IMG/VR virus record: IMGVR_UViG_3300045971_000577
Location: 124,001 to 188,000 of that record
Reading direction: 5' to 3' (one strand)
DNA length: 64,000 nt
Translations under genes and position numbers: made by a program
Notes under the pieces: model-generated
What the model was told of the DNA's origin: nothing
What the model saw: only the letters and a program-made list of their open reading frames with translations
The model's database searches: none
Part shown: positions 3,078 through 63,999 of the stretch, piece after piece
Numbering within the stretch: position 1 is the stretch's first letter
Layout of the letters: every line of letters begins with the position of its first letter

Positions 3078-3418
3078 TTAACTTCCTTCACGATAATGTC
3101 ACCAGATGGCAACTCTGTTTCTACTTGTGTCGACTTCGGTACAGGAGGATTTGTCTTGATGACTTTCGGTGTAGGAGTCATATTCATTCCTACAGCACTA
3201 GGTACAGGTCCCTTCAAACCAGTCGCAACAACTGCTTGCTGAACGCGATGATTTTCACGAGCAATTTGTTCGGCAGTCTTTGCAATTTCGCCACCGTTGA
3301 CAAGTTGATCACCGCGAGCGTTTACCTTCATGTTTCCAATTGCAGGTGATTTTTCGTTTTCACGGCGAATAGAATCCATGTCTATTGTTACACCGCGATA
3401 TGTTACATGTTTAGCCAT
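3074..3418 (-). CDS. hypothetical protein
   Basis: ORF coupled to neighbours; GNMKVNARGD motif. Confidence 0.6.
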   Translation of the reverse strand: MAKHVTYRGVTIDMDSIRRENEKSPAIGNMKVNARGDQLVNGGEIAKTAEQIARENHRVQQAVVATGLKGPVPSAVGMNMTPTPKVIKTNPPVPKSTQVETELPSGDIIVKEVK

Positions 3419-3960
3419 TATGCTATTTCCTTTAGATAATCTTTAATGTCGAGTCCGTACTTAATGGAATCGACTTTGTGAACCCCGATAAGATATAGTA
3501 TATACGAGGATACACTTGATCCTCTACCTACACCCCATATAAATTTATTCTTTCTCATGTAATCGATCAAGAATATAAACACACGCAGAAGCATAATCAA
3601 CTCACGCTCTTCGTACATTTTGTATTCTTGATGCACGCGATCAATCTCTTGCTGTACCTTGCATTTATCGAGCAGCCACGCAAGCACGTCTATTTGCTGA
3701 TAGATTACTGGAAAAATCCATTGATCAGCACACTTTTCGTGAAACTCATCGAATGATAATATTTCTTCGGGCGCACCCTCGAAAGTTATTACTTCGGACA
3801 GGAGTTCTGATTGGTGTTCTTGATGTAGTCTTATCTCGTCGTCAAAAATTACATTCAAGTGGCTGATGTTTTTGCCTTGCAATAACAATTCTCGCAGGCT
3901 ATCACTATTTAGTATTGCCTGGCCGTATGTGTTTATTGTTAGATTTTCTTCGGCTTCCAT
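3418..3960 (-). CDS. DNA polymerase III alpha (DnaE)-like N-terminal palm fragment
   Basis: WGVGRGSSVSSYILYLIGVHKVDSIKYGL matches DnaE GPGRGSAAGSLVAY.LGIT.IDP...L; only 180 aa. Confidence 0.8.
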   Translation of the reverse strand: MEAEENLTINTYGQAILNSDSLRELLLQGKNISHLNVIFDDEIRLHQEHQSELLSEVITFEGAPEEILSFDEFHEKCADQWIFPVIYQQIDVLAWLLDKCKVQQEIDRVHQEYKMYEERELIMLLRVFIFLIDYMRKNKFIWGVGRGSSVSSYILYLIGVHKVDSIKYGLDIKDYLKEIA

Positions 3961-14244: not shown

Positions 14245-14661
14245 TTAGCGTTTTCTTGATTCGTCCAATGGACCGACATTAGGATTATTGATGGTTTTGA
14301 TCATCATGTCGATAAACTTCTGATAGATTTCAGGATCATCATAATCTCTAAGCTTCAAAAAGATTTCGTGTGTTAGATCCCTGATTTCTCTGTTAGGAGT
14401 AGTCATTTTGCTACCTAGCTGAGCCGAAGGTTCGGTATTATTGGTAATATTATTCATCATACCATCGAATCTAGCATCACCTGTAGCTTCTTTTACTTTC
14501 TTAACAGGTTTTACAACGGCTTTAACTTCCTGTTTTGTCTTCTTATATTTGGCCTTAAACTCTTTATCAGACATTTTATTGTCCTTAAGGTCAAGGTCAA
14601 GCTCAGACATTTTACTTTCGGAAACACTTCCCTTTTTCCCACTAAACTCACCGAGTTTCAT
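14245..14661 (-). CDS. hypothetical protein, possible virion protein
   Basis: Last gene of a late operon; start MKLGEF. Confidence 0.55.
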   Translation of the reverse strand: MKLGEFSGKKGSVSESKMSELDLDLKDNKMSDKEFKAKYKKTKQEVKAVVKPVKKVKEATGDARFDGMMNNITNNTEPSAQLGSKMTTPNREIRDLTHEIFLKLRDYDDPEIYQKFIDMMIKTINNPNVGPLDESRKR

Positions 14662-25448: not shown

Positions 25449-25709
25449 TCAATATTTCTTGTCTTTATGCCAATGACCGGATTCAATCATTTCTTCGACA
25501 GTACGTTCCCAACGCTTACGAGCTTGTTTCTTCATACGCTGTTTGGCCACGGCAGGTTTCTCGTAGGCCATTCGATCTTTTACTTCCTTTAATAGACCAG
25601 TGTCTTGAACCTTCTTCGACCATGTACGCAGGGCGCGGCCAAAATCCTCGCCCCTAACTTCGACTGTGATTCCCTGCTGCTTTTTTCCGTCTCTGAACTT
25701 ATTAGACAT
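25449..25709 (-). CDS. rpsU: ribosomal protein bS21
   Basis: VEVRGEDFGRALRTWSKKV...LKEVKDRMAYEKPAV.K.R.K..ARKR. Confidence 0.88.
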   Translation of the reverse strand: MSNKFRDGKKQQGITVEVRGEDFGRALRTWSKKVQDTGLLKEVKDRMAYEKPAVAKQRMKKQARKRWERTVEEMIESGHWHKDKKY

Positions 25710-26937
25710 TATTTGCTCGTTTCTTTGTTTTGTAAACATGTTGTGTTATACCATTTTCGTCAACAAATATTTTGTTGACTCCTTCCTTATGTAATCGTGG
25801 TAGTATAAACTGAGTAGCCTGGAGATCCTTCTCCATTACCGCACGCAATCCTCTAGCACCTACCTTTTGCTTCAGACATTGTTCAGCTACATTCAGTAGG
25901 TATTTATCGTCAAACTCTAAAGTGACACCATCAATTTTGAACAGTGCTCTGAATTGGCTTACGATGCTATTTTTAGGTTCTCTTAGAATACGAAGCATCA
26001 TATCCGGTGTTAGGTCGTCAAACACAACAACCACCGGGCAGCGGCCCACAAACTCCGGGATCAATCCATATTTAATAAAATCTTCGGAACCCGCCGATCT
26101 GATTGTATCAGAAAATGGAGTCTTTGTACTCAGTGTTGCACCAATACCGATGCTTGTTTTGGAACGACTCTTTCGAATTACTTCATCAAGCCCGACAAAG
26201 GAGCCACTGCACACAAAAAGGATGTTCTTTGTATCAAAATCAATGATATCGTCGTGCAACTCAACTTTTATGGATGTACCTTCAATAAGTTTCAATAATG
26301 CTTGCTGTACACCTTCTCCGGAGACGTCTCTGTTCGCAGAGGCTGTATCATTCTTTCTACTTTTCTTGTCAATTTCATCGATAAAGATAATACCACGCTG
26401 AGCACGCTCAATATCATCATCTGCTTCCATAATTAATCGCTTGATTAGATTTTCAACATCTTCTCCAACGTAGCCCGCTTCAGTCAATGAGGTTGCATCG
26501 GCAATAATGTATGGTAAATCAAACATCTTGGCTACAGTTTTCACTGTAAGAGTCTTTCCGCTGCCAGATGATCCCACAATAAGCAAATTAGACTTATCGA
26601 TTTCTGTCTTTGACTTACTGTTAATACGTTTGTAGTGATTATAGACTGCAACTGAAATTGCTTGCTTTGCAGAATCCTGTCCTACAACATATTCGTCAAG
26701 ATATTTTTTTATCTGTTCCGGGGTGTAGATCTTATCTTTCTTTTTCTTCTCAGGTTCTGCTTTTTCTTCAGTATGCAATATTTCGTGACTAACATCTACG
26801 CATTCATTGCAAATATACAGATTGGCTCCGTTTACAATAGGACCTTCGACTAGATGTTTTACCTGATTCCTACCTTTACCACAGAAAGAGCAATTGATTG
26901 CTAATTTCATAACTGGTGCGTCGTCATTTTCAATCAT
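25702..26937 (-). CDS. clpX: ClpX unfoldase
   Basis: CSFC...CNEC zinc domain, AVYNHYKR, GSGKT, GYVGEDVE, DEIDK, RDVSGEGVQQALLK, GARGLR. Confidence 0.96.
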   Translation of the reverse strand: MIENDDAPVMKLAINCSFCGKGRNQVKHLVEGPIVNGANLYICNECVDVSHEILHTEEKAEPEKKKKDKIYTPEQIKKYLDEYVVGQDSAKQAISVAVYNHYKRINSKSKTEIDKSNLLIVGSSGSGKTLTVKTVAKMFDLPYIIADATSLTEAGYVGEDVENLIKRLIMEADDDIERAQRGIIFIDEIDKKSRKNDTASANRDVSGEGVQQALLKLIEGTSIKVELHDDIIDFDTKNILFVCSGSFVGLDEVIRKSRSKTSIGIGATLSTKTPFSDTIRSAGSEDFIKYGLIPEFVGRCPVVVVFDDLTPDMMLRILREPKNSIVSQFRALFKIDGVTLEFDDKYLLNVAEQCLKQKVGARGLRAVMEKDLQATQFILPRLHKEGVNKIFVDENGITQHVYKTKKRANNV

Positions 26938-30459: not shown

Positions 30460-30786
30460 TTAGTAGATGTTGTGCTTTTGTTTTAGGTTATTAAACTCTT
30501 GGTTATATGTTGGCGAGAATAATTCCTTATTTAGGATTCTAACCAAATCCTGGAAGTCGTTTTTCAACACAAGTGTATCACTTCTGAGATTCATTAGTTC
30601 TACTGCCTGAAACTCGCTGGTCCTAATCAATCCCTTCAATATTCCGGGATTGGCCATATTGCCGCGTAGTTTTGATGCAACGCATTCCTGCTCAGTCAGC
30701 TCTTTTAGTTGTTCTACACTCAACGAACCGAAGAGTGTATCCAGAAGATCAATCTTCAGGAGTTGGTCATTTGTAAGTGTAATCAT
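30460..30786 (-). CDS. hypothetical protein
   Basis: ORF coupled to thyA. Confidence 0.55.
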   Translation of the reverse strand: MITLTNDQLLKIDLLDTLFGSLSVEQLKELTEQECVASKLRGNMANPGILKGLIRTSEFQAVELMNLRSDTLVLKNDFQDLVRILNKELFSPTYNQEFNNLKQKHNIY

Positions 30787-32258
30787 ACGGCCATCGGTGG
30801 TTTGTTGGTTACATCGGGATATGGGTCATATCCGATAAGCTCAATGTCTTCCCACTGCAAAGATAGTATATCTTCGAATGTAGGTAGTTCCTTCTTGATG
30901 TTTAGTGTAGGCAACTTACGTGGAGTGCGCTCCAACATCTGCTGTACCATATCCATTTGGTTCTGATAGATGTGTACGTCCCATCCCATGTATACCAAAT
31001 CGCCCGGCTCCATACCCAAGTGCTTCGCAAAGATATGATTCAGTAGGGCATAAGACGCGATGTTGAACGGTAAGCCATAAGGCACGTCGTTACTACGCAT
31101 TACGAAACAGGTGTTTAGTTTGCCCTTATTTAGGGTAAAATCGCCCTCTACACTGTGCATATGCATCATGTGGCAGGGCGGCAGTGCCATCTCATGTAAT
31201 TGTCCAGGATTCCATCCCGTTACCACGTGCCTGCGTCCGTACGGATCTTTCTTGATACCGTCAATCAGTTCTTTGATTTGATCTACCCCTAAATGCTCAG
31301 TAGTCTTTTCTGGAATAAAAATAGATGAATATAACAGTTGAGTTTTTAGATCAACCCACTGGCACGTTTTTTCACTATAATATCCTTTGCCGGCAATATC
31401 TTTATCTAATGAATATTTCTTCCAATTAGTTATTTTTTTATCCCATCCCGGCAATGTCTGTGCATCGATAACGAAGTTAGAAAATAATAACCATCGAGCA
31501 GACACATATATATTTTTTCTACCGTAGTTAGGATATGAATGATCTTTTTCATCATAACATCTCGATATCATTGCATCCCACATTGGGCGAAGTTTTTTCC
31601 ATAGTTCCGGGTACGCAGACTTTACGGTTATATCACCGGAACATGCTACACCTGCCACATTGGGGAAATATGGATCGTATATCTCACCTTTATCGATATT
31701 CTGCTTACGAACATTTGCTACATACCCGGTCTTATGAAACTTTACATCAAAAAATAACTTATTTCCATTACCCCTGATTTCTTTTGTTACGGTATATTGT
31801 CCACAAGAGTTTGATGTGAACTCTTTCCCGACATATCCATGAACATCTGAAGAAGTATCTATTATGATATCTTTTGTAAATGGTGTATCAATACCCGGAG
31901 GTATTTTTGCAAAACCATCAAAGTTTCTCCATTGATGCGAATAACCATATCCTAAACTTCCAGAAGGCAAATGGTTTAGGCTGCGCTTGTCCAGGAACTC
32001 ACGCGAGGTGTTTCCCTTCCAGATGTTGATGTTTTTAGCTTCTAAGAGCTTGGTCTGTGTTTCTCCACGTAGGAAAAACATAGTCTCTTCGAAAGCAATA
32101 CGCAAAGGTGTTTTGCGTGTAGTTTGGATGGGAAAGCCTTGCGCTAAATCCCAGCGTAGAAGTCTGCCAAATACAGCTCGAGAGCCAACACCTGTTCGGT
32201 CTGGTTTATCGACGCCATTTTCGACGACATCCTTTAAAAGTTCAATATAGTTTTGCAT
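30783..32258 (-). CDS. thyA: thymidylate synthase with an in-frame HNH-like insertion
   Basis: DRTGVG, GFP..TTRK, QWRNF, GVDQI, ALPPCH, RSND..GLPFN, HIY; ~208-aa insert. Confidence 0.92.
   Translation of the reverse strand: MQNYIELLKDVVENGVDKPDRTGVGSRAVFGRLLRWDLAQGFPIQTTRKTPLRIAFEETMFFLRGETQTKLLEAKNINIWKGNTSREFLDKRSLNHLPSGSLGYGYSHQWRNFDGFAKIPPGIDTPFTKDIIIDTSSDVHGYVGKEFTSNSCGQYTVTKEIRGNGNKLFFDVKFHKTGYVANVRKQNIDKGEIYDPYFPNVAGVACSGDITVKSAYPELWKKLRPMWDAMISRCYDEKDHSYPNYGRKNIYVSARWLLFSNFVIDAQTLPGWDKKITNWKKYSLDKDIAGKGYYSEKTCQWVDLKTQLLYSSIFIPEKTTEHLGVDQIKELIDGIKKDPYGRRHVVTGWNPGQLHEMALPPCHMMHMHSVEGDFTLNKGKLNTCFVMRSNDVPYGLPFNIASYALLNHIFAKHLGMEPGDLVYMGWDVHIYQNQMDMVQQMLERTPRKLPTLNIKKELPTFEDILSLQWEDIELIGYDPYPDVTNKPPMAV
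31290..31913 (-). mobile_element. HNH-type endonuclease domain inserted in thyA
   Basis: WDAMISRCY...YPNYG...RWLLFSNF...LDKD...YSEKTCQWV; more AT-rich than the flanks. Confidence 0.65.
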
Positions 32259-34339: not shown

Positions 34340-35728
34340 TTATCTGACAGCTTCTCTGGATTTGGCCCGAACCTTGACGAAATTGGTTTCGTTGTATGCC
34401 TTACCATCCTTGTAACGGGAAATCAAGTAGTCAACAGACGACGGTGCAGCACGGTAATCGAGCTGGTTAGTGCTGAACTTTCCATCACGGATATTAAGCA
34501 TCAAACGACCCTTCTTGCTCTTCTTCATGGAAGAAGTAATCGGATCCTTGTACACTTCGACCCATTTACCGTTGATGAAAGCAGCCGAGCACTTCATTGC
34601 AAATTCCAACGTGTCACGGTTGACCATTTGCAGCAACGCACCACCCTGACCGAACGCAACGTTGTCGGCACTGTAGCCATTCATATCCATCACAGTAAGG
34701 ATGGCACGGATCATTGCGTGATCAATACCGTCACCCTGGATGATGCGAACGTTGTTGAGTACCTTGTAACCCTTGGCATTCACGGTGTGGCCGTAATACT
34801 TGTCCAGGATCTTCAAGCAGTCATTTACTACTTGCACGGGATCGCCGCTGTCAGGACGAACAACAACTACCGCACCACTGGCCTTGACTTCGTCAATCAG
34901 TTCAGTACCCCACTTCTTGCAGGCTTCGTAGATGTCGTAACTGTCGCTCACGAAAGCAACCGGTTGACCGGGCTTACCGTAAATCTTCAGCATGTTACGA
35001 TAGGAAGCAACTTCGTTTTCACGACCCCAGCTGGTAACCGTACTGTGCTCCATAGCAGGGATACTGAAGCCACATACTTCGGCGTCGTAGTATTCCATTG
35101 CAGCCATGATGCCAGAAACGGTGTCAGTGCCCATGAAGTTGATAAGGTGAGCCATGCCACCTAGTGCAGCACTTTCCAAACTAGACACGCCGCGAGCACC
35201 AAAGTCATGCAACTTGAAGTCGATAAGCGAAGGATCGCCGTTCTTTTCCAGGAAGTGCAGGATAATTTGCTTGCTAACGTAGCTGTTGGATGCAACAGTG
35301 GTTGGATACCAAATTGCGCGGAGCAATGCAGTTTCCAGGAAGCTGGTCAACCAGTAGCAACGCGGATCGGTGTTGACAATCGAAACCAACACGTTCTTCA
35401 AGTACATAACGGAACCTTCGTCCACCGACTTGATTTCGACAGGCAGATGACCGCCGTGCGTGTTGACAATGTACATCCAGTCGTCGTAGTTGAACGGCTC
35501 GCCATGCACTTGCATGACCTTACGTGCTTGTTCTACCATTGCGGCAGTAACAGGAGTGGTCAGGTACTCACGGATGAATGCTTGCAGACCAAAGAAGACG
35601 AGCTGGTCATACTTTCCGCCGCGTGATTCGATGTAGGAATACACATATTCAGTACCGGGTGGATATTGGCAAAATTGTGAATATTTATATGAATCCGAAT
35701 TCAAAATTATATTGCGTGCAAATTTCAT
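34340..35728 (-). CDS. nadV: nicotinamide phosphoribosyltransferase
   Basis: DSYKYSQ, LHDFGARG, GTDT, PAMEHS, VSDSYD, RPDSGDP, IQGDG, GGALLQ. Confidence 0.95.
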   Translation of the reverse strand: MKFARNIILNSDSYKYSQFCQYPPGTEYVYSYIESRGGKYDQLVFFGLQAFIREYLTTPVTAAMVEQARKVMQVHGEPFNYDDWMYIVNTHGGHLPVEIKSVDEGSVMYLKNVLVSIVNTDPRCYWLTSFLETALLRAIWYPTTVASNSYVSKQIILHFLEKNGDPSLIDFKLHDFGARGVSSLESAALGGMAHLINFMGTDTVSGIMAAMEYYDAEVCGFSIPAMEHSTVTSWGRENEVASYRNMLKIYGKPGQPVAFVSDSYDIYEACKKWGTELIDEVKASGAVVVVRPDSGDPVQVVNDCLKILDKYYGHTVNAKGYKVLNNVRIIQGDGIDHAMIRAILTVMDMNGYSADNVAFGQGGALLQMVNRDTLEFAMKCSAAFINGKWVEVYKDPITSSMKKSKKGRLMLNIRDGKFSTNQLDYRAAPSSVDYLISRYKDGKAYNETNFVKVRAKSREAVR

Positions 35729-36352: not shown

Positions 36353-36616
36353 TTATACGTCTTCCGGGTAATAATTTCTGTCGGGATTTACCTTTGGTAC
36401 TTCCCTACACATCTCACCACCGTATGCTAATACAAATGCCATAGCATCGGCTTCGTCTTCAAATTTTAGGTGAGAGGCAATATTGAGCACTGAAGAATCT
36501 GCCCACCCACCGCTGTAATATTCGGCACCTTCGTCAAATCCTTTCTCGTTGAGATCTTCAGCAAGCTTCAGCAAGCCTTGCCTAGTCAGCGTTGGGATTT
36601 TGACGAAGACAGTCAT
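36353..36616 (-). CDS. small protein, F..E.DA..F.L family
   Basis: LKFEDEADAMAFVLAYG. Confidence 0.55.
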   Translation of the reverse strand: MTVFVKIPTLTRQGLLKLAEDLNEKGFDEGAEYYSGGWADSSVLNIASHLKFEDEADAMAFVLAYGGEMCREVPKVNPDRNYYPEDV

Positions 36617-37671
36617 CCGCGTGCTCTTGCTACCAGCGTGTTGATGATGTGCTTGTGGTCACCGTAGATCAGTTCTTCCATCTTGTCGATTTCGGACAAC
36701 TTGAACCACTTGGCCTTCTTAGCATCGTCGGACCCCTTCACACGGGGCAGTTTACCGTCACCACCAGTAAGTTCGATAAGATATGCCATAGTGATGGTAC
36801 GACCACGCAAATCGCGATCAGGATGGTCAAATGTTTCGTTGTAGGTAATACCCTTACGAAGCACGATTTCTGGAACCTTGATCTTGGTTTCTTCCACCAA
36901 CTCGCGGATAACGCAATCTGCCAAACGTTCCTTGGGATTGATGAATCCACCCGGGAGTGCCCAAAGGCCCTTGCCCGGAGCGTAACCGCGTTGGATAAGC
37001 AGGATGTGGCCGCCTTGGATAACCACTGCATCAGTAGTCTGGAATACAGGCACAAAAGGTGCAGATTCCCAGGACTTGTGATAGTCCTTGTAGAAAATGT
37101 ACTCTTCAACCATGTCGCTGTATCCGGGAGTATTTCTCCAAGATTTCATGTATTCGAATACTGCGGCAGGAACTGCACCCTGGATGTAATCCAGGTGGCC
37201 TTCGAAGTAGAGTTCGCGCACCTTAGTGGCGTCGATTGGCTGTGAACCGTGTTCGACAAATCCGTTCAGTGGAATAAAGTCCCACTCCGGGAATGCATGG
37301 TTGTACCAGCTGGAATCGTCCTTGTCGTAACCCATGATTGCGATATCAGCATCGTCGATATCAGGGCTGTCAGTCTTCACCACGGATTGCACGTTGCTAA
37401 TCCAGTTGTTGTTGCTGTACTTGAAGTCTCGCAGAGGATAGATCTCGAACTGAGCATTTGGCCGCACAGCTTCGATTGCACTCGTAATCATTTCCTTACG
37501 TTCAGCAAACTTGAACGGATTCTTCGGAGTGCGGGGCTGGAATGAACTGCCGACGAGAATGATTACCTTTTCGGCAATATCCAGGGCTTGGAGGAAGTTG
37601 GCAAGATGCCCGTTGTGGGCGGATTGAAATCGTCCGATGAGGACGACACGCTTGTATCGTTTTATTGACAT
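36613..37671 (-). CDS. nadM: bifunctional NMN adenylyltransferase / Nudix ADP-ribose pyrophosphatase
   Basis: IGRFQSAHNGH (HxGH), KNPF...ER, Nudix box GG.....E......RELVEET, SDDA. Confidence 0.95.
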   Translation of the reverse strand: MSIKRYKRVVLIGRFQSAHNGHLANFLQALDIAEKVIILVGSSFQPRTPKNPFKFAERKEMITSAIEAVRPNAQFEIYPLRDFKYSNNNWISNVQSVVKTDSPDIDDADIAIMGYDKDDSSWYNHAFPEWDFIPLNGFVEHGSQPIDATKVRELYFEGHLDYIQGAVPAAVFEYMKSWRNTPGYSDMVEEYIFYKDYHKSWESAPFVPVFQTTDAVVIQGGHILLIQRGYAPGKGLWALPGGFINPKERLADCVIRELVEETKIKVPEIVLRKGITYNETFDHPDRDLRGRTITMAYLIELTGGDGKLPRVKGSDDAKKAKWFKLSEIDKMEELIYGDHKHIINTLVARARG

Positions 37672-52858: not shown

Positions 52859-53740
52859 TTATTTATCATTTGACAGAAAATACCGACTTATTTCGATCGG
52901 ATAGTAAAAGTTTCTTCCGGGCGGCCATTCATAAAAGTTAGAAGCTATACGCTTGTATACTCGTTCCTTTTCAACTAATCCACAATATTTATCGACTGCC
53001 GCAAGGATTGTTTCGAGACTCTCTAAATCTTCCTCGGTAGCATTTTCGTCCCGGAACAATAGTTCGGCGATTGAATCCGGATCAAAGTATGGTCCGTCGA
53101 GCACAGTATCCTGCTGCTTTTTTAGCCAATCACCGGAACGAGGATCCTGCAGACTGCGCCTCATTACACGCTTGAAACCAGCAGATCCAAAAATCCAACG
53201 AATGAGTTGAATTGGACGATTCTGAGCATCACGCGCTGGTGCTTCAAAGATACCAACGACCGCAGAAATAGCAGCAATGGCTAAGTTTCGATGAGCTCCT
53301 TTATAACCAGACTGTTCACCAGGACTGTAGTGATAGAACTTTTGCCAGTCGGGATCGCCGAAGTTGAAATCGATCTGAACAAAGCCGGTTCGTGGTTGCG
53401 CCTCTTGTAGTTCTTCCTTGTACGTGACAATGGGATACTTGAGATGCAACATGTCGCCGTTTCGTGCAACATTTTCTTTACCAAATGCTTCTTCGAGATT
53501 TTCTCTGAATGCAGTTACACCATGACCCCACCATTTATCATCGATAACAAGATCGATGTCGCCGGAATAGTTCCGCTTACCTGTCGATCCGATTATGTAA
53601 TCGTTTAGATCGAATGGAAATTCAAGATCGTATGACAGCTTAGTAAGGGTAGGCCCGATTTCTTGCTGATGGATAGTTCCGCACCCAGGAACGGCAGCGC
53701 CCCCTTGGTCAGTGGGGGTAACAATGTATTTCAGTTCCAT
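52859..53740 (-). CDS. Pol-beta superfamily nucleotidyltransferase-like protein
   Basis: IGSTGK...SGDIDLVI (GS and DxD) plus third acidic residue in VQIDF. Confidence 0.7.
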   Translation of the reverse strand: MELKYIVTPTDQGGAAVPGCGTIHQQEIGPTLTKLSYDLEFPFDLNDYIIGSTGKRNYSGDIDLVIDDKWWGHGVTAFRENLEEAFGKENVARNGDMLHLKYPIVTYKEELQEAQPRTGFVQIDFNFGDPDWQKFYHYSPGEQSGYKGAHRNLAIAAISAVVGIFEAPARDAQNRPIQLIRWIFGSAGFKRVMRRSLQDPRSGDWLKKQQDTVLDGPYFDPDSIAELLFRDENATEEDLESLETILAAVDKYCGLVEKERVYKRIASNFYEWPPGRNFYYPIEISRYFLSNDK

Positions 53741-53958
53741 TATTGTATTAGGTCGTTTAGACTTAGGTCGATTTCGGATAGGAGTCGATCGTAATGCTTA
53801 CGGTGCTTCAATCCCTTTTTCCAAGACTGAATAACTCGATTCTTGATGCGTGTTACGTTTATATCCTGATTGGCATGAGCCTTAAGGTGACGAAGGAGTT
53901 TGATGTACTGGTTTGCCTTTAGTACGTCGTTTAATGTTACTATCTCATCTATTCTCAT
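53740..53958 (-). CDS. small hypothetical protein
   Basis: Start MRIDEIV; coupled to neighbours. Confidence 0.55.
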   Translation of the reverse strand: MRIDEIVTLNDVLKANQYIKLLRHLKAHANQDINVTRIKNRVIQSWKKGLKHRKHYDRLLSEIDLSLNDLIQ

Positions 53959-58460: not shown

Positions 58461-59502
58461 TTTGCTGAATATTCCATGTTAGTCGGATCTTATCTTTTCC
58501 AGAAACCGCCGAAGAAATAATCGAATGTGTGGTTAGTAACCTACCGTATTTCTCTGCTGCCTTTGCTGCGTCTTTTATGTCCGGCGACCATTTCGGAAAA
58601 GACACAGCCCAATCATTTTCAATAGCAACTTCTACAAGATCCCAGCCTTTTTGATCTCTATCAGGACAGACTATAACCTGCTTCTGTAAACGGTTTATGA
58701 TGTCAACCTTTGATTGGCCTATTTCTCCAAGGTTGCTTACACCATCTACCGTCCAGGCATCCAATACACCCTCGTTTACAATACAGTATTTACGTGACCA
58801 ATCACCCTGAGGGTCTAAGTTATAGACAAAGTCTTCAGGGCACTGCTGATAATACTTGGGTGGGAATTTTTCTCCTGAGTCGTAATTCAATCTTGAAGTA
58901 AATCCAACGATTTTACCGCGGAAGTAATACGGAATTATCACACGCCTATTTAGATCGTGCTTAGTGGATGGTGTCCAATAGAACTCGTCCAGATTGTATA
59001 TTCGCCTATTGATAAGATATTCAACAGTCGTTAGAAACTCTGGATCATCTAGCCCGTATTCTAGCCATTGATTTATTGTCAACGAATCTTCAGGAAGATT
59101 CATAGGCTTCCACTTCTGGAACAATGACTTGAGTTTACTTTCTAATGTTTCGGGTGGCTTTTCGCCGTCGCCCTCTCTCACTTCGGCAATGTTATTTTTC
59201 TGTTTGAATATTTCAAATTCAATCTGTTCAATAAACTTATCGTCAACGTGGATTTGCTTCAAGAAGAACTTCAATGATTTAGAAAGTTCTTTGCCTTCAG
59301 TATATGCTGCGCTAAATCCGCAGTTGAAGCAGTTCATACAAATAGAGTTAGGATTAAACTGTATACCGAAGCGAAATCGTGTATCCGCACCGTGTCCCTG
59401 CGTATGACAGAGTGGGCAATTTCTCTTCTTCCACGATTTAGGTGCATCCCTTAATTGCCCTATGTTAGCTAATATGGCTTCTTTTAATATATCATTTATC
59501 AT
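58435..59502 (-). CDS. DNA primase (T4 gp61-like)
   Basis: CPLC...CFNC zinc finger, IIP, KY, TOPRIM EGVLDA, PDRD..G, KD. Confidence 0.88.
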   Translation of the reverse strand: MINDILKEAILANIGQLRDAPKSWKKRNCPLCHTQGHGADTRFRFGIQFNPNSICMNCFNCGFSAAYTEGKELSKSLKFFLKQIHVDDKFIEQIEFEIFKQKNNIAEVREGDGEKPPETLESKLKSLFQKWKPMNLPEDSLTINQWLEYGLDDPEFLTTVEYLINRRIYNLDEFYWTPSTKHDLNRRVIIPYYFRGKIVGFTSRLNYDSGEKFPPKYYQQCPEDFVYNLDPQGDWSRKYCIVNEGVLDAWTVDGVSNLGEIGQSKVDIINRLQKQVIVCPDRDQKGWDLVEVAIENDWAVSFPKWSPDIKDAAKAAEKYGRLLTTHSIISSAVSGKDKIRLTWNIQQNGRSRKRK

Positions 59503-60283
59503 GTATTTCTTCTAAATTCCATCCATGCTTAGATGGCTTCTTTTTTCGATGACAACCATATATTATGTTGTATGGCAAATTATTCTCTTTACAGAAATCA
59601 TTGATGCTTTTGATTATTTCTGTGCTACCGTCCGGAAAGGTAAGTCTCCAACTTTTTGCAGTGCCGGATGCTTCTTTGAATTTTCTAATTCTTTCCTGTG
59701 CTTCTTCGGCGGTCTCTTTTTCAAATCTATTTTTCTGCCCTATACTGTATCTTAATCTATCTTCCTCTGTAAGCACTTTTTCTTGCCACGCGGCTCTTAA
59801 CCCGTTACTAATCCTGATACCATACTCTTCAAGAGCCTTATCATCCTGATATATTGTATTCCAGAAGTCGTTAGATATTTCACTTCGACGAATTTTTCTA
59901 TCGGGATTCAGTATATAATTCTTTTTTCTTGTTTCGGATGATTTCTGTATTATTTCTTTTAGATGATCACTATCTAAATTTCGGTATGTATTGCCACCGG
60001 TTCCGCCTTCGGTAATATTATATCCATTAGGTTTTATTGTGTTAAATGTAGCAATAAATTCTATTTCAAGATTATCAAGATCTGTAGAATTATCCGTCTC
60101 GGCAAGTATAGTAAGTTCAAAGTTATCTATACCATATTTTCTTAATGCTCGATGAAAATATGATGTTATATTTTCTTTTTTGGATTCTTTAATGTGCTCC
60201 GATAATCTAATATCAATAGTGCGCTCAGTCTTACCTATGTAAGATTTTTGATTTAGTTTATTTGTTGCTTTATAAATTAACAT
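59492..60283 (-). CDS. GIY-YIG homing endonuclease
   Basis: LIYKATN...SYIGKT...R..EH...E...I...GYN.TEGG. Confidence 0.88.
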   Translation of the reverse strand: MLIYKATNKLNQKSYIGKTERTIDIRLSEHIKESKKENITSYFHRALRKYGIDNFELTILAETDNSTDLDNLEIEFIATFNTIKPNGYNITEGGTGGNTYRNLDSDHLKEIIQKSSETRKKNYILNPDRKIRRSEISNDFWNTIYQDDKALEEYGIRISNGLRAAWQEKVLTEEDRLRYSIGQKNRFEKETAEEAQERIRKFKEASGTAKSWRLTFPDGSTEIIKSINDFCKENNLPYNIIYGCHRKKKPSKHGWNLEEIHDK

Positions 60284-60333: not shown

Positions 60334-60552
60334 TTAAGTTTCTGTCCAGGATTTTACAGCATCAAATGCGCGTGTTAAGTCGGGATCGGCGCCGCCGAGA
60401 AACATAAGAAGATCGTCCCGGTCTATACTATCGAGCTCTCTTATACACCTAGATTTATCGATCTCGTTTTGTTTTTGCTTAGGAAAATATTCTCTAACAA
60501 GATCATATATCTTCCGAATTTCCGGAGTGGAAAATTCAAAATTATTAGACAT
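60334..60552 (-). CDS. hypothetical protein
   Basis: ORF in operon. Confidence 0.5.
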   Translation of the reverse strand: MSNNFEFSTPEIRKIYDLVREYFPKQKQNEIDKSRCIRELDSIDRDDLLMFLGGADPDLTRAFDAVKSWTET

Positions 60553-60871
60553 CTAATCTCGGCCGGATATTTTTCCCATCAATGATAAGATAATGCTGGT
60601 CGCTAAAACGACCAGATGCTATATTAGTCACCAATACCGTTAGCAAATAGCTACCATCTGCAAATTTTCTGTTAATGGTTGCGGGAATACACCCATCCTT
60701 ATCTACAGCACCCTCTGTTCTAAAAATACCAATCGGTTCCCCTTTAAGTGATGCCGGTTCTAAAAATTTAGAACTATCCCATAGGTCAGCATACTCGGCG
60801 TCTTCTAACTCTGTCCATACAAAACACGCTAGTTCAGTAGGAATTCTTACCAGATCTAAATGATTAAACAT
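60545..60871 (-). CDS. hypothetical protein
   Basis: SD AGGAG; promoter TTGACT-17-TATACT upstream. Confidence 0.6.
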   Translation of the reverse strand: MFNHLDLVRIPTELACFVWTELEDAEYADLWDSSKFLEPASLKGEPIGIFRTEGAVDKDGCIPATINRKFADGSYLLTVLVTNIASGRFSDQHYLIIDGKNIRPRLDV

Positions 60872-61013
60872 ATCTTTCTCCTATACTTACGCAAGTATAG
60901 CAGTTCATGCCATGAAAGTCAAGTATGATATGGGCTGATTACTTATATCCTAATTCCTTAAGTTTATCGATCACCATATCGAGATATCCATCGGGTTCTA
61001 CCTCTTCCTTGAA

Positions 61014-61322
61014 CTACTTAAATTGCCCGTTGGGTAATGAATATACAATTCTGTTTTTAACATCTACGCGATGTTTATTAGGTTTATCACTGAAAATAGG
61101 ATCTTTTGTCCAACATTCATAGGTATAATTTCCAACTTTTACTATCGAATTTGTATCAAGATAAGATTTCAATTCAGGCGTGTCAGTTCCCTTACCGTCC
61201 CAAATCAAAACCCATTTCCCTTTTGCCTGAGCGCCACCTGCAACGGCCAATCCTGCTGCGCCTGCAGCACCCTTCAAAAATCCACGACGTGAAATATCTT
61301 CTAAAATTTCTTCTAATCTCAT
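61014..61322 (-). CDS. Tat-signal-bearing small protein
   Basis: MRLEEILED-ISRRGFLKG-AAGAAGLAVAGG-AQA. Confidence 0.65.
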   Translation of the reverse strand: MRLEEILEDISRRGFLKGAAGAAGLAVAGGAQAKGKWVLIWDGKGTDTPELKSYLDTNSIVKVGNYTYECWTKDPIFSDKPNKHRVDVKNRIVYSLPNGQFK

Positions 61323-61323
61323 G

Positions 61324-62193
61324 TTATGTCCTTACAATAAGTTTCTCTAGAACTCCAGGGTTCAACACTTCAGTTGATGGGAAATATCTAAACTTCAACC
61401 ACATGAAGTTGGCAGAGAATGTCCATGCTTGTGTACCAGTATAACCGATATACTCGATACTGGTGGACATCGTTGTAGGGAATATCTCGAACCACCGATT
61501 ATGATTGAGATATGGATCTGGCGTTTCTTCTAATGAACCCCATATTTCTAAGATGCCAGTGAAGTCCTTAGTATATGTCGAAAAGGAATGCACTGAATCG
61601 ACATGATTTTGGACTCGTGACCCGGGAATTCTAGACGAGTAGAAACACGGTCTTGGGGCACCCATAAGTGGAGCCATAATGTCTGGTGTCCAATCTCCGG
61701 GCAATAGTGTTACGCTAGGAATAGGTGACTTGAACGCTTGTTCAGTAATTTCCAATTCCATAGATACATTATTATCCATATCCGAAAACATAGGCATCTC
61801 TACATAATAATCAGGAACATTAACTACAAATTCCTTTGTTCTGATAAGAACCATATTGTAGATACCAGCAGCAATACGGGCAATATCACCACTATCTAGT
61901 TCTAATGTGATAATACCTTTGGCCGGGCCTAGCTTGCATAGCTTTTCAAGTACAACAGTCTTATTGTCGGGATCGATAACCCGTGCATAAACTTGTTGGT
62001 TACACGCAACATCGTACGGAACTCGATCGGGCTGTAAGGCTCTAAAGAAGATTTTATTGTCCACACCTTTATGACATTTTATTGGGTTTTTGGACATGGG
62101 TCCCGTATCCTTACAAGGACAAAAAGAATCACCAACGACTGTCAACTGTCTGACATGGTCGTACATATATACCTTATTTAGGTTTATATCCAT
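61324..62193 (-). CDS. conserved hypothetical protein, possible structural protein
   Basis: HKGVDNKIFF; beta-rich 289 aa. Confidence 0.55.
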   Translation of the reverse strand: MDINLNKVYMYDHVRQLTVVGDSFCPCKDTGPMSKNPIKCHKGVDNKIFFRALQPDRVPYDVACNQQVYARVIDPDNKTVVLEKLCKLGPAKGIITLELDSGDIARIAAGIYNMVLIRTKEFVVNVPDYYVEMPMFSDMDNNVSMELEITEQAFKSPIPSVTLLPGDWTPDIMAPLMGAPRPCFYSSRIPGSRVQNHVDSVHSFSTYTKDFTGILEIWGSLEETPDPYLNHNRWFEIFPTTMSTSIEYIGYTGTQAWTFSANFMWLKFRYFPSTEVLNPGVLEKLIVRT

Positions 62194-62873
62194 TATTTGG
62201 CTACCTTTTTGCAGTTATCAAAATGCCATCTTTGCATGGCGCCTTTTCCACCCGATTTATCACAATACGGGCATGTATTTATTATCTTCTTGCTACCCAA
62301 TAAATGAGATGGCCGGCCCTTTAGCGAATTTGAGCTTCCTTTCTTGGGGCCTGGTTTTCCCTTCTCCTTTATCGGTTTTTCTTTCTTCATTCCTTTGTTC
62401 CACGCGTCTTTACCGAACATGGGATTTTTATCTCCCTGTTTTGACTTGGAAATATTATCTCTATGAGTTTCACTTTTAGATATACCCTTACCAAAACCAG
62501 CAAGCGTGTTGGATATCTTCTCTCTTGTTTCTGCAGTAACCACATAATTATCATTAGATCTACGGGTGACAGCCTGTTTCTTTCTTGACTCTGCCGATAC
62601 TATACGTCCGGCACTTCCTTCGCCACCATCAGTCATATTTCGAAGGATGCCAGTGCCATTATCTTTCCGACCGTACCAGCGGATCATTCTGCGTTCAATA
62701 GCAAACGCACCGAGTTCGGTAAGCTTTGTTTCAAGAAAGATTATTCTATTACGATCTTGCGGTACAGCTATACTATGATTTTTAGAGAATGCTCGGCTAT
62801 CCTTCCCCTTACCTATGTGATAGGGTGAGAAATCCGCACGAAGATAAGCATAAACATAAAATTCTGTGTTCAT
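62193..62873 (-). CDS. GIY-YIG-like homing endonuclease with NUMOD3 repeats
   Basis: FYVYAYLR...PYHIGKG..RA...E...I..YGRK....L.N.TDGGEG; [16 protein letters not shown]; CPYC. Confidence 0.85.
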
Positions 62874-62919: not shown

Positions 62920-63291
62920 ATGATAAAATTAGACGAAATTCAATCAAAGTTCCCCTTCCTTAGCGGGTTAAAGTGCCTTACTCACGAGTATATTGGCATC
63001 ATTCAGAACTCTGACGATAAAATTATAAGTTTCTACGATTATGAATCGATTAGGACGCCAGAAGAAAAGAAGCTCTTCTTAGAGTATGGCGAAATTTGGT
63101 GGTGGGAGAGTAATAGACTTCTGCCTATCAACATCTTTATGCAGGGCCAAATGGTCCCGTTTAGGTATTGTCTCAAGACAATGGTCAATAAAGATGTAGA
63201 GATTATGTTTGGTTCGGTAACAAGCCTAAACAACATAATGAAGAAGCGTATTAAGAAACGACAGATTCAGCTAGTAAGACGGCAGGACTAG
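62920..63291 (+). CDS. conserved hypothetical protein
   Basis: KFPFLS...EYIGIIQN...WWWESNR.LPINIF; late promoter at 62907. Confidence 0.65.
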   Translation: MIKLDEIQSKFPFLSGLKCLTHEYIGIIQNSDDKIISFYDYESIRTPEEKKLFLEYGEIWWWESNRLLPINIFMQGQMVPFRYCLKTMVNKDVEIMFGSVTSLNNIMKKRIKKRQIQLVRRQD

Positions 63292-63460
63292 ATTCTTCAA
63301 ATTCAATACTGGCGTATTCAAATTGTGCGCCCATAAGACGAAAGATAACCAAGTCTGATTCGTCTACAGTTACATTTTCGCAGCCATTTGAATGATAGAG
63401 TTTGCGAACTCTATCAAAATCACATATTATGAAATTCTCTTTCACACATTTATAAGTCAT
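63251..63460 (-). CDS. hypothetical protein
   Basis: Coupled to the DnaE fragment. Confidence 0.45.
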   Translation of the reverse strand: MTYKCVKENFIICDFDRVRKLYHSNGCENVTVDESDLVIFRLMGAQFEYASIEFEESSPAVLLAESVVS

Positions 63461-63999
63461 TCTTGTGACATTTTCTCAACAAGTAGATTTAGGTGGACAA
63501 TAATGGCCAGAGAGTAGGATATAGAATGGCTTCTTTTGAAAAAGTAAGCATCATCGCCCTCGACCTTTACCCACACATCTTTGCGAATTCTATCCCAGTC
63601 ATGCCGCTGTAGGTATGCTTTTGCTGGGCGCATAATCGCCAAAATCATAGCTAAATCCTCGACCGACTTAGGCTTGTATCGCTGTAGTAGGTCGCTATGC
63701 CCTTTGAGGTGGAATAACTGGTCAGTTATCTCTTCGTATTCAAAGAAATCCCAAGGTGGTTCTTTATTTAGAAGGTCAAGTAGATGCTGCTCGCTCCTAA
63801 CACCTTCATACATGTTTACATTCAAGAAGTCAATCTTAAAATATCCATAATCCTTGGCAATACGGTGATCAATCGTAGAAATGTTTGTTACAGGATCGCG
63901 TGGAATATTCTGAAAATAGATAGCCGTATTATGCTTATCATATTTGTTATCAGCACGGTCAATGCGGCCAACAACATGCTCCAATCCTTGCAAGATTTT
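63457..63999 (-). CDS. DnaE (Pol III alpha)-like second fragment, 5' end beyond the window
   Basis: KHNTAIY, GYFKIDFLN (third catalytic Asp), LAIMRPA, YFFKRSHSISY (DnaE FNKSHA.AY). Confidence 0.8.
   Translation of the reverse strand, partial: KILQGLEHVVGRIDRADNKYDKHNTAIYFQNIPRDPVTNISTIDHRIAKDYGYFKIDFLNVNMYEGVRSEQHLLDLLNKEPPWDFFEYEEITDQLFHLKGHSDLLQRYKPKSVEDLAMILAIMRPAKAYLQRHDWDRIRKDVWVKVEGDDAYFFKRSHSISYSLAIIVHLNLLVEKMSQE

What the first reader, a model, noticed from the sequence alone, without database searches (positions are those of the whole stretch)
61014..61322. Capsid-leader-like N-terminus joined to a twin-arginine export signal
Seen: MRLEEILE followed directly by a textbook Tat peptide (SRRGFLK, hydrophobic region, AQA cleavage site) and a ~70-aa mature domain. 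The first 8 residues resemble other late-protein starts here. Known: T4 internal proteins use a short N-terminal capsid-targeting sequence cut after (L/I)xE, and Tat exports folded proteins. Inference: the protein may be packaged, injected, and then exported to the periplasm of the newly infected cell.
Basis: partly seen in the sequence, partly recalled or inferred. Interest (0 to 1): 0.62.

Follow-up and report, generated by a model that had tools for sequence, protein, structure and literature searches.

The report
Phage Tat protein with capsid-style leader
A small gene of a 369-kb pond jumbo phage joins a short start-tag, shared by many swappable accessory genes in this phage group and resembling the tag phage T4 uses to load proteins into its head, to a genuine twin-arginine export signal; it may be carried in the virion and exported to the next host's periplasm, but this is not shown.

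Summary
Window 61014-61322 (minus strand) is a real 102-aa gene: MRLEEILE-DI-SRRGFLK, a 16-residue Gly/Ala-rich uncharged stretch, AQA, then a basic 69-aa domain with no real relatives. The Tat signal passes NCBIfam TIGR01409. The gene is under purifying selection (pN 0.10, pS 0.66 against its one relative).

The "capsid-leader" idea has real comparative support. M[RK][LIM]xE[ILFV] starts 12 of 535 ORFs in this genome, against 0.35 expected. In 46 related IMG/VR loci the slot after the same virion-protein gene is hypervariable. Seventeen of the 18-19 non-primase, non-homing-endonuclease genes found first in that slot begin with this leader. Their cargo is unrelated: ART-like, GNAT, SprT-like, SLT and DUF6321 domains.

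The leader holds the L/I-x-E motif cut by T4 gp21, and the phage encodes a gp21-family protease. The capsid protein, scaffold and protease carry [KR][LI]xE near their own N-termini. In the cultured relative PA5oct, 3 of 5 leader-bearing proteins are on the virion mass-spectrometry list.

Packaging, cleavage, injection and Tat export after injection are all untested. Export only in the producing cell is a nearly equal rival. Verdict: partly supported; a new variant of the T4 internal-protein system.

The parts
61014..61322 (-). 102-aa ORF (stop codon 61014-61016): leader + Tat signal + 69-aa domain
   Evidence: pN 0.10 and pS 0.66 against P0002
61299..61322 (-). Leader, residues 1-8 (MRLEEILE). 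The only two L/I-x-E sites of the protein are L3-E4-E5 and I6-L7-E8
   Evidence: Motif M[RK][LIM]xE[ILFV] in 12 of 535 ORFs against 0.35 expected; site list; same leader on slot cargo in relatives
61224..61298 (-). Twin-arginine signal peptide, residues 9-33 (DISRRGFLKGAAGAAGLAVAGGAQA), with predicted signal-peptidase site AQA|K
   Evidence: TIGR01409 at 23.2 bits against a cut-off of 16.7; PF10518 at 22.3 against 22.7
61272..61292 (-). Tat consensus heptad SRRGFLK, residues 11-17
   Evidence: Read from the sequence; SRRDFLK in P0002
61017..61223 (-). Mature domain, residues 34-102: 8.0 kDa, pI 9.3, predicted small beta-rich fold, no real relatives
61329..61333 (-). AAGGA ribosome-binding site, 6 nt before the ATG and inside the end of the upstream gene
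61324..62193 (-). Upstream gene, 289 aa, homolog of PA5oct gp262 ('structural protein', ESI-MS/MS). It anchors the hypervariable slot
60894..60922 (-). Sigma-70-like promoter match (TTGACT-17-TATACT, with TG) in the 142-nt gap after the ORF. It suggests the Tat gene ends its transcription unit
   Evidence: consensus match only
53740..53958 (-). 72-aa ORF starting MRIDEIVT, ortholog of PA5oct gp254 (MRLDEIQS), which is on the PA5oct virion MS list. The leader is kept in all relatives
14245..14661 (-). 138-aa ORF starting MKLGEF: another leader-bearing ORF in the window
59492..60283 (-). GIY-YIG homing endonuclease. With ORFs 60334-60552 and 60545-60871 and the Tat gene it fills a slot that is empty in PA5oct
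62193..62873 (-). NUMOD3-type homing endonuclease inserted upstream of the gp262-like gene

Best explanation
The gene is an accessory cassette in a hypervariable slot of a PA5oct-related 369-kb jumbo phage.

Shown:
- It is a real, conserved gene.
- Residues 9-33 are a bona fide Tat signal ending in AQA.
- Residues 1-8 carry a leader, M[RK]LxE[IFV], that this phage clade places on many unrelated accessory proteins.
- The leader contains the L/I-x-E site of T4-type prohead proteases, and the phage encodes such a protease.

Inferred:
- The leader works like the T4 capsid targeting sequence. It takes the protein into the prohead core, where the protease cuts after E5 or E8. This leaves a basic roughly 10-kDa protein that still has its Tat signal, starting ILEDISRR.. 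or DISRR...
- The protein is ejected with the DNA and refolds in the cytoplasm of the new host.
- Tat export is post-translational and takes folded proteins, so the protein is then exported and cut at AQA|K.
- The 8-kDa basic domain acts in the periplasm early in infection, for example to exclude other phage or to act on an envelope component.
- Copies that are not packaged would be exported in the producing cell as well.
For: Tat signal. It is conserved in P0002.

Leader statistics.
- The motif starts 12 of 535 ORFs against 0.35 expected, and 0 of 5000 column shuffles reach 12.
- Given M[RK][LIM]x?[ILFV], position 5 is E in 12 of 20 cases. The motif sits strictly at the N-terminus, with an internal density of 0.25 per 535 positions.
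- Codons vary synonymously, so the constraint is on the protein.

Slot.
- 46 related loci were found.
- Primase follows the gp262-like gene directly in about half, as in PA5oct.
- In 17 others the first gene is a leader-bearing cargo: ART-PolyVal-like, GNAT, SprT-like with HExxH, SLT, DUF6321 and unknowns.
- Some loci carry two or three leader-bearing cargo genes in tandem.
- These domain types are the repertoire predicted to be virion-delivered (PMC5512222).

Protease and head proteins.
- PF03420 scores 88.7 bits at G000 310063-310491.
- The capsid protein (MATKLFES), scaffold (MAKKIDEI) and protease (MANKLYEF) are the only ORFs with [KR][LI]xE at offset 4.
- The capsid protein is a T4 gp23 homolog.

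T4 precedent. The CTS is MKTYQEFIAE. It is cut after I-A-E and sits on diverse internal proteins.

PA5oct. gp279, gp254 and gp104, 3 of the 5 annotated leader-bearing genes, are on the virion MS list, against 93 of 461 genes overall. gp254 is the ortholog of window ORF 53740-53958.

The Tat ORF has L/I-x-E sites only in its first 8 residues, and its mature part is basic, like the T4 internal proteins.
Against: - There is no direct evidence of packaging, cleavage or ejection for any leader-bearing protein.
- The PA5oct enrichment is marginal (about p = 0.06 by my binomial estimate). That MS list also contains ribonucleotide reductase, thymidylate synthase, ligase and UvsX, so it is not specific to the virion.
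- An 11-residue acidic n-region is normal for Tat signals, so the Tat part alone needs no extra explanation.
- A protein carrying a working Tat signal would be exported in the producing cell, in competition with packaging.
- The leader is not demonstrably homologous to the T4 CTS.
- L/I-x-E depletion in cargo is seen in the slot cargo (0.57% against 0.99%) but not in the 12 ORFs of this genome.
- No late promoter was identified.
- The function of the mature domain is unknown.
Confidence: 0.4

Rival explanations
1. Ordinary phage-encoded Tat substrate. The protein is made during infection and exported by host Tat in the same cell, and it acts in that cell's periplasm, for example in superinfection exclusion, lysis timing or receptor masking. 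It is never packaged. The MRLxE[IF] start is a clade habit with another role, or has no role in this protein.
For: - The Tat signal is complete and conserved.
- The n-region length is typical for Tat (my own knowledge).
- Small phage periplasmic proteins made in the infected cell are well known, for example T4 Spackle and RI (my own knowledge).
- 2 of 5 leader-bearing PA5oct proteins were not found in virions.
- No packaging evidence exists for this protein.
Against: - This reading leaves unexplained why the same leader heads at least 10 unrelated cargo families, most without any export signal.
- It does not explain why the leader matches the cleavage motif of the phage's own gp21-type protease.
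- It does not explain why the motif recurs on the capsid protein, scaffold and protease.
Confidence: 0.35
2. The Gly/Ala-rich stretch is not a cleaved Tat signal. It is a membrane anchor or a signal-anchor-release (SAR) type segment, as it seems to be in the SLT cargo of the same slot. The protein would then be tethered to, or slowly released from, the inner membrane.
For: Seven SLT-type cargo proteins share the architecture leader + second LxE + basic pair (KR/KK/KH) + AxxGxLxLAxxG stretch, without a Tat consensus or a clear AxA site. Gly/Ala-rich transmembrane segments are typical of SAR endolysins (my own knowledge).
Against: This ORF, unlike the SLT cargo, has the full SRRxFLK consensus and an AQA site. 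Both are kept in P0002, and the signal passes TIGR01409.
Confidence: 0.1
3. The shared start is not a protein signal. It is either a translation or recombination feature (a conserved joint used to swap cassettes, or an optimal start for translationally coupled genes) or a tag for the phage's own Clp/FtsH-type proteases.
For: - Slot cargo genes start 0-5 nt after the conserved end (..KLIVRT*) of the upstream gene, and most use ATGAGATTA.
- The T4 CTS-coding sequence is thought to help cassette exchange (my own knowledge).
- The clade encodes ClpX-, ClpA-, ClpS- and FtsH-like proteins.
Against: - The motif also heads 11 other ORFs scattered over the genome with no shared upstream sequence.
- Codons vary synonymously: AGA, CGG or CGA for Arg; TTA, CTA, CTG, TTG or CTC for Leu; GAA or GAG for Glu.
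- Position 4 is free while E5 and the hydrophobic position 6 are fixed. This points to selection on the peptide.
Confidence: 0.1

Closest known systems
[quoted passage not shown]
   Same: - A short N-terminal leader on otherwise unrelated, small, basic, non-essential proteins encoded at variable loci.
- The leader ends in L/I-x-E, the gp21 cleavage motif, and the phage has a gp21-family protease.
- With one gap the pattern is similar: M, basic, x, aromatic, E, hydrophobic, hydrophobic, x, E. L047 MKLYEVLTE is the closest example.

   Different: - The leader sequence differs: MRLxE[IF], with the conserved LxE already at residues 3-5.
- The phage is a distant PA5oct-like jumbo phage.
- Packaging and cleavage are unproven here.
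- No T4 internal protein carries an export signal.
T4 Alt (packaged, injected ADP-ribosyltransferase) and the polyvalent proteins of Iyer et al. 2017 (PMC5512222)
   Same: Sister cassettes in the same slot carry ART-PolyVal-like, zincin or SprT-like, SLT and GNAT domains. This is the effector repertoire predicted or known to be delivered from the capsid.
   Different: Here each domain is a separate small protein with its own leader rather than one giant multidomain protein. The ART and SprT hits lie just under the Pfam cut-offs. The Tat ORF's own domain matches none of these families.
Bacterial twin-arginine signal peptides (TIGR01409, PF10518)
   Same: SRRxFLK, a weakly hydrophobic Gly/Ala-rich h-region, an AxA c-region, and an n-region of about 10 residues.
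   Different: - The signal is phage-encoded.
- The cargo is a small domain (69 aa) with no sign of a cofactor.
- The n-region doubles as a clade-wide leader carrying two protease-type sites.
Small phage periplasmic proteins made in the infected cell: T4 Spackle (Sec signal) and T4 RI (SAR domain)
   Same: Size class: a precursor of about 100 aa and a periplasmic domain of about 70 aa. They are accessory genes, and T4 sp lies near the primase gene 61 (my own knowledge).
   Different: There is no sequence similarity (tblastn against phages found nothing). The pathway is Tat rather than Sec or SAR. The function here is unknown.
Propeptide-bearing ejection proteins of phiKZ, 201phi2-1 and SPN3US
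   Same: Jumbo phages in which many head and ejected proteins are cut after Glu by a gp21-related protease (PMC9026906).
   Different: Those propeptides are long and the motif is S/A/G-x-E. They are not a short shared N-terminal tag on swappable cassettes.

Membership tests
Twin-arginine (Tat) signal peptide | S/T-R-R-x-F-L-K motif near the N-terminus | tested here: met
   S11-R-R-G-F-L-K17; SRRDFLK in P0002
Twin-arginine (Tat) signal peptide | Match to a curated signal HMM above its cut-off | tested here: met
   TIGR01409 at 23.2 bits against 16.7 (P0002 at 27.9). Pfam PF10518 at 22.3 against 22.7 is marginally under
Twin-arginine (Tat) signal peptide | Uncharged, moderately hydrophobic h-region followed by an AxA signal-peptidase site | tested here: met
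   GAAGAAGLAVAGGAQA: 16 uncharged residues, GRAVY 1.06, ending AQA|K
Twin-arginine (Tat) signal peptide | Export depends on TatABC and on the RR pair | not testable with these tools
   Needs expression in wild-type and tatC hosts and an RR-to-KK variant. The host of this phage is unknown (pond metagenome)
T4-type capsid targeting sequence / internal protein | Short N-terminal leader shared by otherwise unrelated proteins of the same phage or clade | tested here: met
   12 ORFs in the genome (0.35 expected), 29 of 529 ORFs in related loci, and at least 10 unrelated cargo families
T4-type capsid targeting sequence / internal protein | Leader contains or ends in the prohead-protease site L/I-x-E | tested here: met
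   L3-x-E5 is in every leader. This ORF also has I6-L7-E8 and no further site. Motif definition from PMC9026906
T4-type capsid targeting sequence / internal protein | Phage encodes a gp21-family (S77) prohead protease and a gp23-type capsid protein | tested here: met
   PF03420 at 88.7 bits. The capsid protein matches T4 gp23 at E = 2e-44
T4-type capsid targeting sequence / internal protein | Sequence homology of the leader to the T4 CTS (MKTYQEFIAE) | tested here: inconclusive
   The resemblance holds only with one gap, and the leader is too short to test for homology
T4-type capsid targeting sequence / internal protein | Protein present in mature virions with the leader removed | not testable with these tools
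   Indirect only. PA5oct gp254, gp279 and gp104 carry the leader and are on a virion MS list that is not fully specific. Peptide-level data are not held
T4-type capsid targeting sequence / internal protein | Ejection into the host with the DNA | not testable with these tools
   No experimental data exist for this clade
SAR (signal-anchor-release) phage proteins | N-terminal Gly/Ala-rich transmembrane segment without a signal-peptidase site | tested here: not met
   An AQA site and the full Tat consensus are present. The SLT sister cargo fits SAR better

The most novel reading that the evidence does not exclude
A route of inject, then export. A phage pre-loads its capsid with a periplasm-acting effector whose Tat signal is kept through head maturation. 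After ejection into the cytoplasm, the host's post-translational Tat pathway, which takes folded proteins, moves it to the periplasm within minutes of infection and before any phage gene is expressed. A corollary: the acidic leader, which carries the protease sites, may damp export in the producing cell, and its removal inside the prohead may arm the signal. The leader + basic pair + hydrophobic stretch + SLT cassettes in sister phages would use the same logic.
Probability: 0.3. Interest if true: 0.85.

Novelty: new variant of a known kind. Interest (0 to 1): 0.68.

Why it matters
If the leader is a capsid-targeting and processing tag, T4-style internal-protein cassettes are not a T-even peculiarity. 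They would be a general strategy of gp21-protease phages, including environmental jumbo phages, and would come with a readable five- or six-residue signature.

That signature would allow candidate injected effectors to be listed directly from sequence. Here they include ART-like, GNAT, metallopeptidase-like and SLT proteins and several orphans.

A tag followed by a Tat signal would be, as far as I could find, the first case of a virion-delivered protein aimed at the periplasm through a host export pathway. That would bear on how phages prepare or defend the envelope at the very start of infection.

The leader could also serve as a packaging tag for engineering PA5oct-like phages, as the CTS does in T4 (PMC9026906).

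If the rival is right, this is still an uncommon phage-encoded Tat substrate of unknown function.

Tried and rejected
- blastn of the region and tblastn of the ORF against 50,697 phage records gave no match.
- The word-index protein search found only the protein itself and P0002.
- The exhaustive HMMER search with the mature domain against 1.84 billion representatives found itself plus four long repetitive proteins. Their hits are summed short repeats (CW..P.YSD.P..) and I reject them as artefacts.
- Pfam at E up to 10, PDB sequences and the ESM Atlas gave nothing for the mature domain.
- I suspected a protein-E-like 'Y.D..SI' adhesin motif from memory. No tool supported it, so I dropped it.
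- AlphaFold2 gave pLDDT 43.6 with a single sequence and 52.5 with the two-sequence alignment. That is too low, so no fold search was run.
- Complex prediction of the prohead protease with ORF residues 1-40 returned no verdict. It counts neither for nor against binding.
- PHROGs gave no family for the other leader-bearing ORFs of the genome.
- The T4 late-promoter word TATAAATA is not enriched and does not occur near the gene. Sigma-70-like matches are at chance level.
- L/I-x-E depletion in cargo gave a mixed result.
- PA5oct peptide-level MS tables are not held. The paper says nothing about propeptides or cleavage.
- Sequencing runs: only two pond-metagenome DNA data sets hold the region and none is RNA.
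- No motif count in an unrelated control genome was done. The controls are internal: column shuffles, offsets and the position-5 spectrum.

Full report
WHAT IS THERE. Window 61014..61322 on the minus strand is a 102-aa ORF: MRLEEILEDISRRGFLKGAAGAAGLAVAGGAQAKGKW.... The ATG at 61322 is the only possible start, because the frame opens three codons upstream. An AAGGA lies 6 nt before the ATG, inside the end of the preceding gene, whose stop codon is 1 nt away. The window is bases 124001-188000 of a 369,145-bp IMG/VR virus record with direct terminal repeats. The record comes from a pond metagenome. Its nearest cultured relative is the Pseudomonas jumbo phage PA5oct, with 58% identity in the helicase.

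THE GENE IS REAL. The only relative found is P0002 (107 aa, 81% identity). It lies on two short ENA contigs directly after the same upstream gene. Codon comparison gives pS 0.66 and pN 0.10, and residues 1-13 are identical.

THE TAT SIGNAL. S11-RRGFLK17 fits the consensus exactly. It is followed by 16 uncharged Gly/Ala-rich residues that end in AQA. NCBIfam TIGR01409 scores 23.2 bits against a cut-off of 16.7, and P0002 scores 27.9. Pfam PF10518 scores 22.3 against 22.7. No other ORF of the genome has a convincing Tat start.

THE MATURE DOMAIN. It has 69 aa, a mass of 8.0 kDa and a pI of 9.3. It has no relatives. An exhaustive HMMER search of 1.84 billion representatives returned only the protein itself and repeat artefacts. 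Pfam, PDB sequences and the ESM Atlas gave nothing. AlphaFold2 models are of low confidence (pLDDT 43.6 and 52.5) and suggest only a small beta-rich fold.

CONTEXT. The upstream gene (61324-62193, 289 aa) is the homolog of PA5oct gp262, annotated as a structural protein found by ESI-MS/MS. In PA5oct, gp262 is followed directly by primase and helicase. In this window four genes lie in between: the Tat ORF, two small orphan ORFs and a GIY-YIG homing endonuclease.

I fetched 46 related IMG/VR loci with the 289-aa protein. In about half of them primase follows directly. In 17 the first gene after it is an unrelated ORF of 98-337 aa. All 17 start M[RK]LxE[IFV], or MKAEEF in two cases. The exceptions are homing endonucleases and one 165-aa ORF in L037.

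The cargo is diverse:
- GNAT: PF00583, 3e-8.
- ART-PolyVal-like: 22-29 bits against a cut-off of 31.2.
- SprT-like with HExxH: 24.8 bits against 25.6.
- SLT lytic transglycosylase: PF01464, 1e-11.
- DUF6321: 3e-22.
- Several orphans.

Some loci carry two or three leader-bearing cassettes in tandem (L016, L028). The slot is therefore a hyperplastic cassette site, and the Tat ORF is one of its cassettes.

THE LEADER. In the whole genome, M[RK][LIM]xE[ILFV] starts 12 of 535 ORFs.
- Independence of the columns predicts 0.35. None of 5000 column shuffles reached 12, and the maximum was 4.
- Given M[RK][LIM]x?[ILFV], position 5 is Glu in 12 of 20 cases.
- The core [KR][LIM]xE[ILFV] occurs at offset 2 twelve times, and at internal positions at only 0.25 per 535 positions.
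- Codons differ synonymously and there is no shared upstream sequence, so the constraint is on the peptide.
- In the related loci, 29 of 529 ORFs carry the leader.

LINK TO HEAD ASSEMBLY.
- Every leader has L/I-x-E at residues 3-5. The Tat ORF also has I6-L7-E8 and no other such site. L/I-x-E followed by cleavage after Glu is the specificity of the T4 prohead protease gp21 (PMC9026906).
- The genome encodes a gp21-family protease (PF03420, 88.7 bits). It lies in a T4-like head module with portal, scaffold and a gp23-type capsid protein.
- With the last position relaxed to allow S or Y, the only three ORFs with the core motif at offset 4 are the capsid protein (MATKLFES), the scaffold (MAKKIDEI) and the protease (MANKLYEF). 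PA5oct has MSNRLFES in its capsid protein and MARQLYEY in its protease.
- The capsid protein keeps three L-x-E sites (E7, E19, E42) in both phages. They lie in the stretch that aligns before the mature N-terminus of T4 gp23.

This is the T4 pattern. In T4, diverse internal proteins share only a 10-residue capsid targeting sequence, MKTYQEFIAE. It takes them into the scaffolding core and is cut off by gp21 (PMC3012670; PMC9026906; PMC8442874). With one gap the new leader resembles that sequence: compare MKLYEVLTE in L047 with MKTYQEFIAE. It is too short to claim homology.

The cargo types (ART, zincin-like peptidase, lytic transglycosylase) are those predicted or known to be delivered from capsids (PMC5512222).

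INDIRECT EXPERIMENTAL SUPPORT. I read the whole annotated PA5oct genome. Five annotated genes start with the strict motif. Three of them (gp279, gp254, gp104) are on the virion MS list, against 93 of 461 genes overall. By my binomial estimate p is about 0.06.
- gp254 (81 aa, MRLDEIQS) is the ortholog of window ORF 53740-53958 (MRIDEIVT). Its leader is kept in all relatives.
- gp104 is a weak homolog of the leader-bearing G000 ORF 237625-238416.
- Caveat: the MS list also flags ribonucleotide reductase, thymidylate synthase, ligase and UvsX. It is therefore not specific to the virion.

A RECURRING ARCHITECTURE. Seven SLT-type cassettes share the plan of the Tat ORF. It runs: leader, a second L-x-E, a basic pair (KR, KK or KH in place of RR), a Gly/Ala-rich hydrophobic stretch, then a domain that must act outside the cytoplasm. 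The cassettes with cytoplasmic-type enzymes (ART, GNAT, SprT-like) have the leader but no hydrophobic stretch. The export element therefore follows the site of action, and the leader is independent of it.

INTERPRETATION. Firmly established: this is a real gene with a genuine Tat signal, and its first residues belong to a clade-wide leader that carries protease-type sites.

Most likely, though inferred: the leader acts like the T4 CTS. I put this at about 0.6. If so, the protein would be packaged, trimmed after E5 or E8 with its Tat signal left intact, ejected, and exported by Tat in the new host. Tat is well suited to a pre-made, refolded protein because it works post-translationally on folded substrates. 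I put the whole chain at about 0.4.

The main rival, at about 0.35, is plain Tat export in the producing cell with no packaging. That fits the signal but leaves the leader phenomenon unexplained. Two lesser rivals stand at about 0.1 each. One is that the hydrophobic stretch is a membrane anchor or SAR-type segment. The other is that the leader is a translational or recombinational feature, or a tag for the phage's own Clp or FtsH proteases.

The function of the 8-kDa basic domain is unknown. Candidates are a periplasmic role early in infection (exclusion of other phage, or action on an envelope component) or late in infection (lysis timing, receptor masking). I cannot decide between them.

NOVELTY. 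I found no paper that combines capsid targeting with twin-arginine export. The PA5oct and RaK2 papers do not describe a shared leader or propeptide sites. I rate this a new variant of a known kind: T4-type internal-protein cassettes in a distant jumbo-phage clade, with a different leader, and in this case fused to a host export signal.

LIMITS. No SignalP or TatP was available. There is no RNA evidence and no usable structure. The complex prediction gave no verdict. No unrelated-genome control was run for the motif. The motif was defined after seeing examples, so the exact fold-enrichment is optimistic, although the margin is large.

Noticed in passing
L006-L051 (IMG/VR loci), just downstream of the gp262-like gene; e.g. 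L016:1892-2290 and 3216-3851, L028:923-2857, L040:6871-7884, L051:234-530: Hypervariable cassette slot. The cargo proteins are ART-like (LYHGT or LYRGMS motifs), GNAT, SprT-like with HExxH, SLT and DUF6321 domains plus orphans, and all start MRLxE[IF]. Some loci carry 2-3 cassettes in tandem. L040 adds five or six 'VI[KR]GRWPEAEP'-type repeats after an ART-like N-terminus.
   Followed up: partly
G000 307612-310569 (= L067:7612-10569, minus strand): The capsid protein, scaffold and S77 protease all begin MA.K[LI]xE. The capsid protein has three L-x-E sites (E7, E19, E42) that are conserved in PA5oct, so it probably loses a short N-terminal propeptide.
   Followed up: partly
G000 264811-265116 (minus strand, outside the window): 101-aa ORF starting MRLTNLSTRRFNVLSRILMIVVALSVSAC.. 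It has an RR pair followed by a lipobox-like VSAC. It may be an exported lipoprotein, for example a spanin or an exclusion protein.
   Followed up: no
window 30783-32258 (-): 491-aa ORF that joins thymidylate synthase matches (residues about 268-484) to an HNH endonuclease match (about 141-310). The thyA gene looks invaded by, or fused with, a homing endonuclease or intein-like element.
   Followed up: no
window 62920-63291 (+): This is the only plus-strand gene in the neighbourhood. It is the well-conserved ortholog of PA5oct gp263 (61% identity), of unknown function, and is divergently transcribed from the gp262-like gene. A NUMOD3 homing endonuclease (62193-62873) has been inserted between the two.
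   Followed up: partly
window 63457-63999 (-) and PA5oct gp173/gp172/gp171: A C-terminal DNA polymerase piece is encoded as a separate ORF. In PA5oct the polymerase is split by a Hef-like homing endonuclease. Homing endonucleases are dense around the replication genes of this clade.
   Followed up: no
window 34340-35728 (-) and 36613-37671 (-): NAD salvage pair: nicotinamide phosphoribosyltransferase, and an NMN adenylyltransferase fused to a Nudix domain. These are strong PHROG matches.
   Followed up: no
window 25702-26937 (-): A ClpX/AAA+-like ATPase. PA5oct relatives also carry ClpA-, ClpS- and FtsH-like genes. The phage therefore brings its own proteolysis machinery, which could in principle read N-terminal tags.
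   Followed up: no
PA5oct NC_071039 annotation (L052-L057): The 'ESI-MS/MS' virion list includes ribonucleotide reductase, thymidylate synthase, DNA ligase, UvsX and GTP cyclohydrolase. It is not a clean virion proteome and should be used with care.
   Followed up: yes
window 60334-60871 (-): Two orphan ORFs of 108 aa and 72 aa lie between the Tat gene and the GIY-YIG endonuclease. A sigma-70-like promoter match precedes them at 60894-60922. They match no family in Pfam, PHROGs or NCBIfam.
   Followed up: partly
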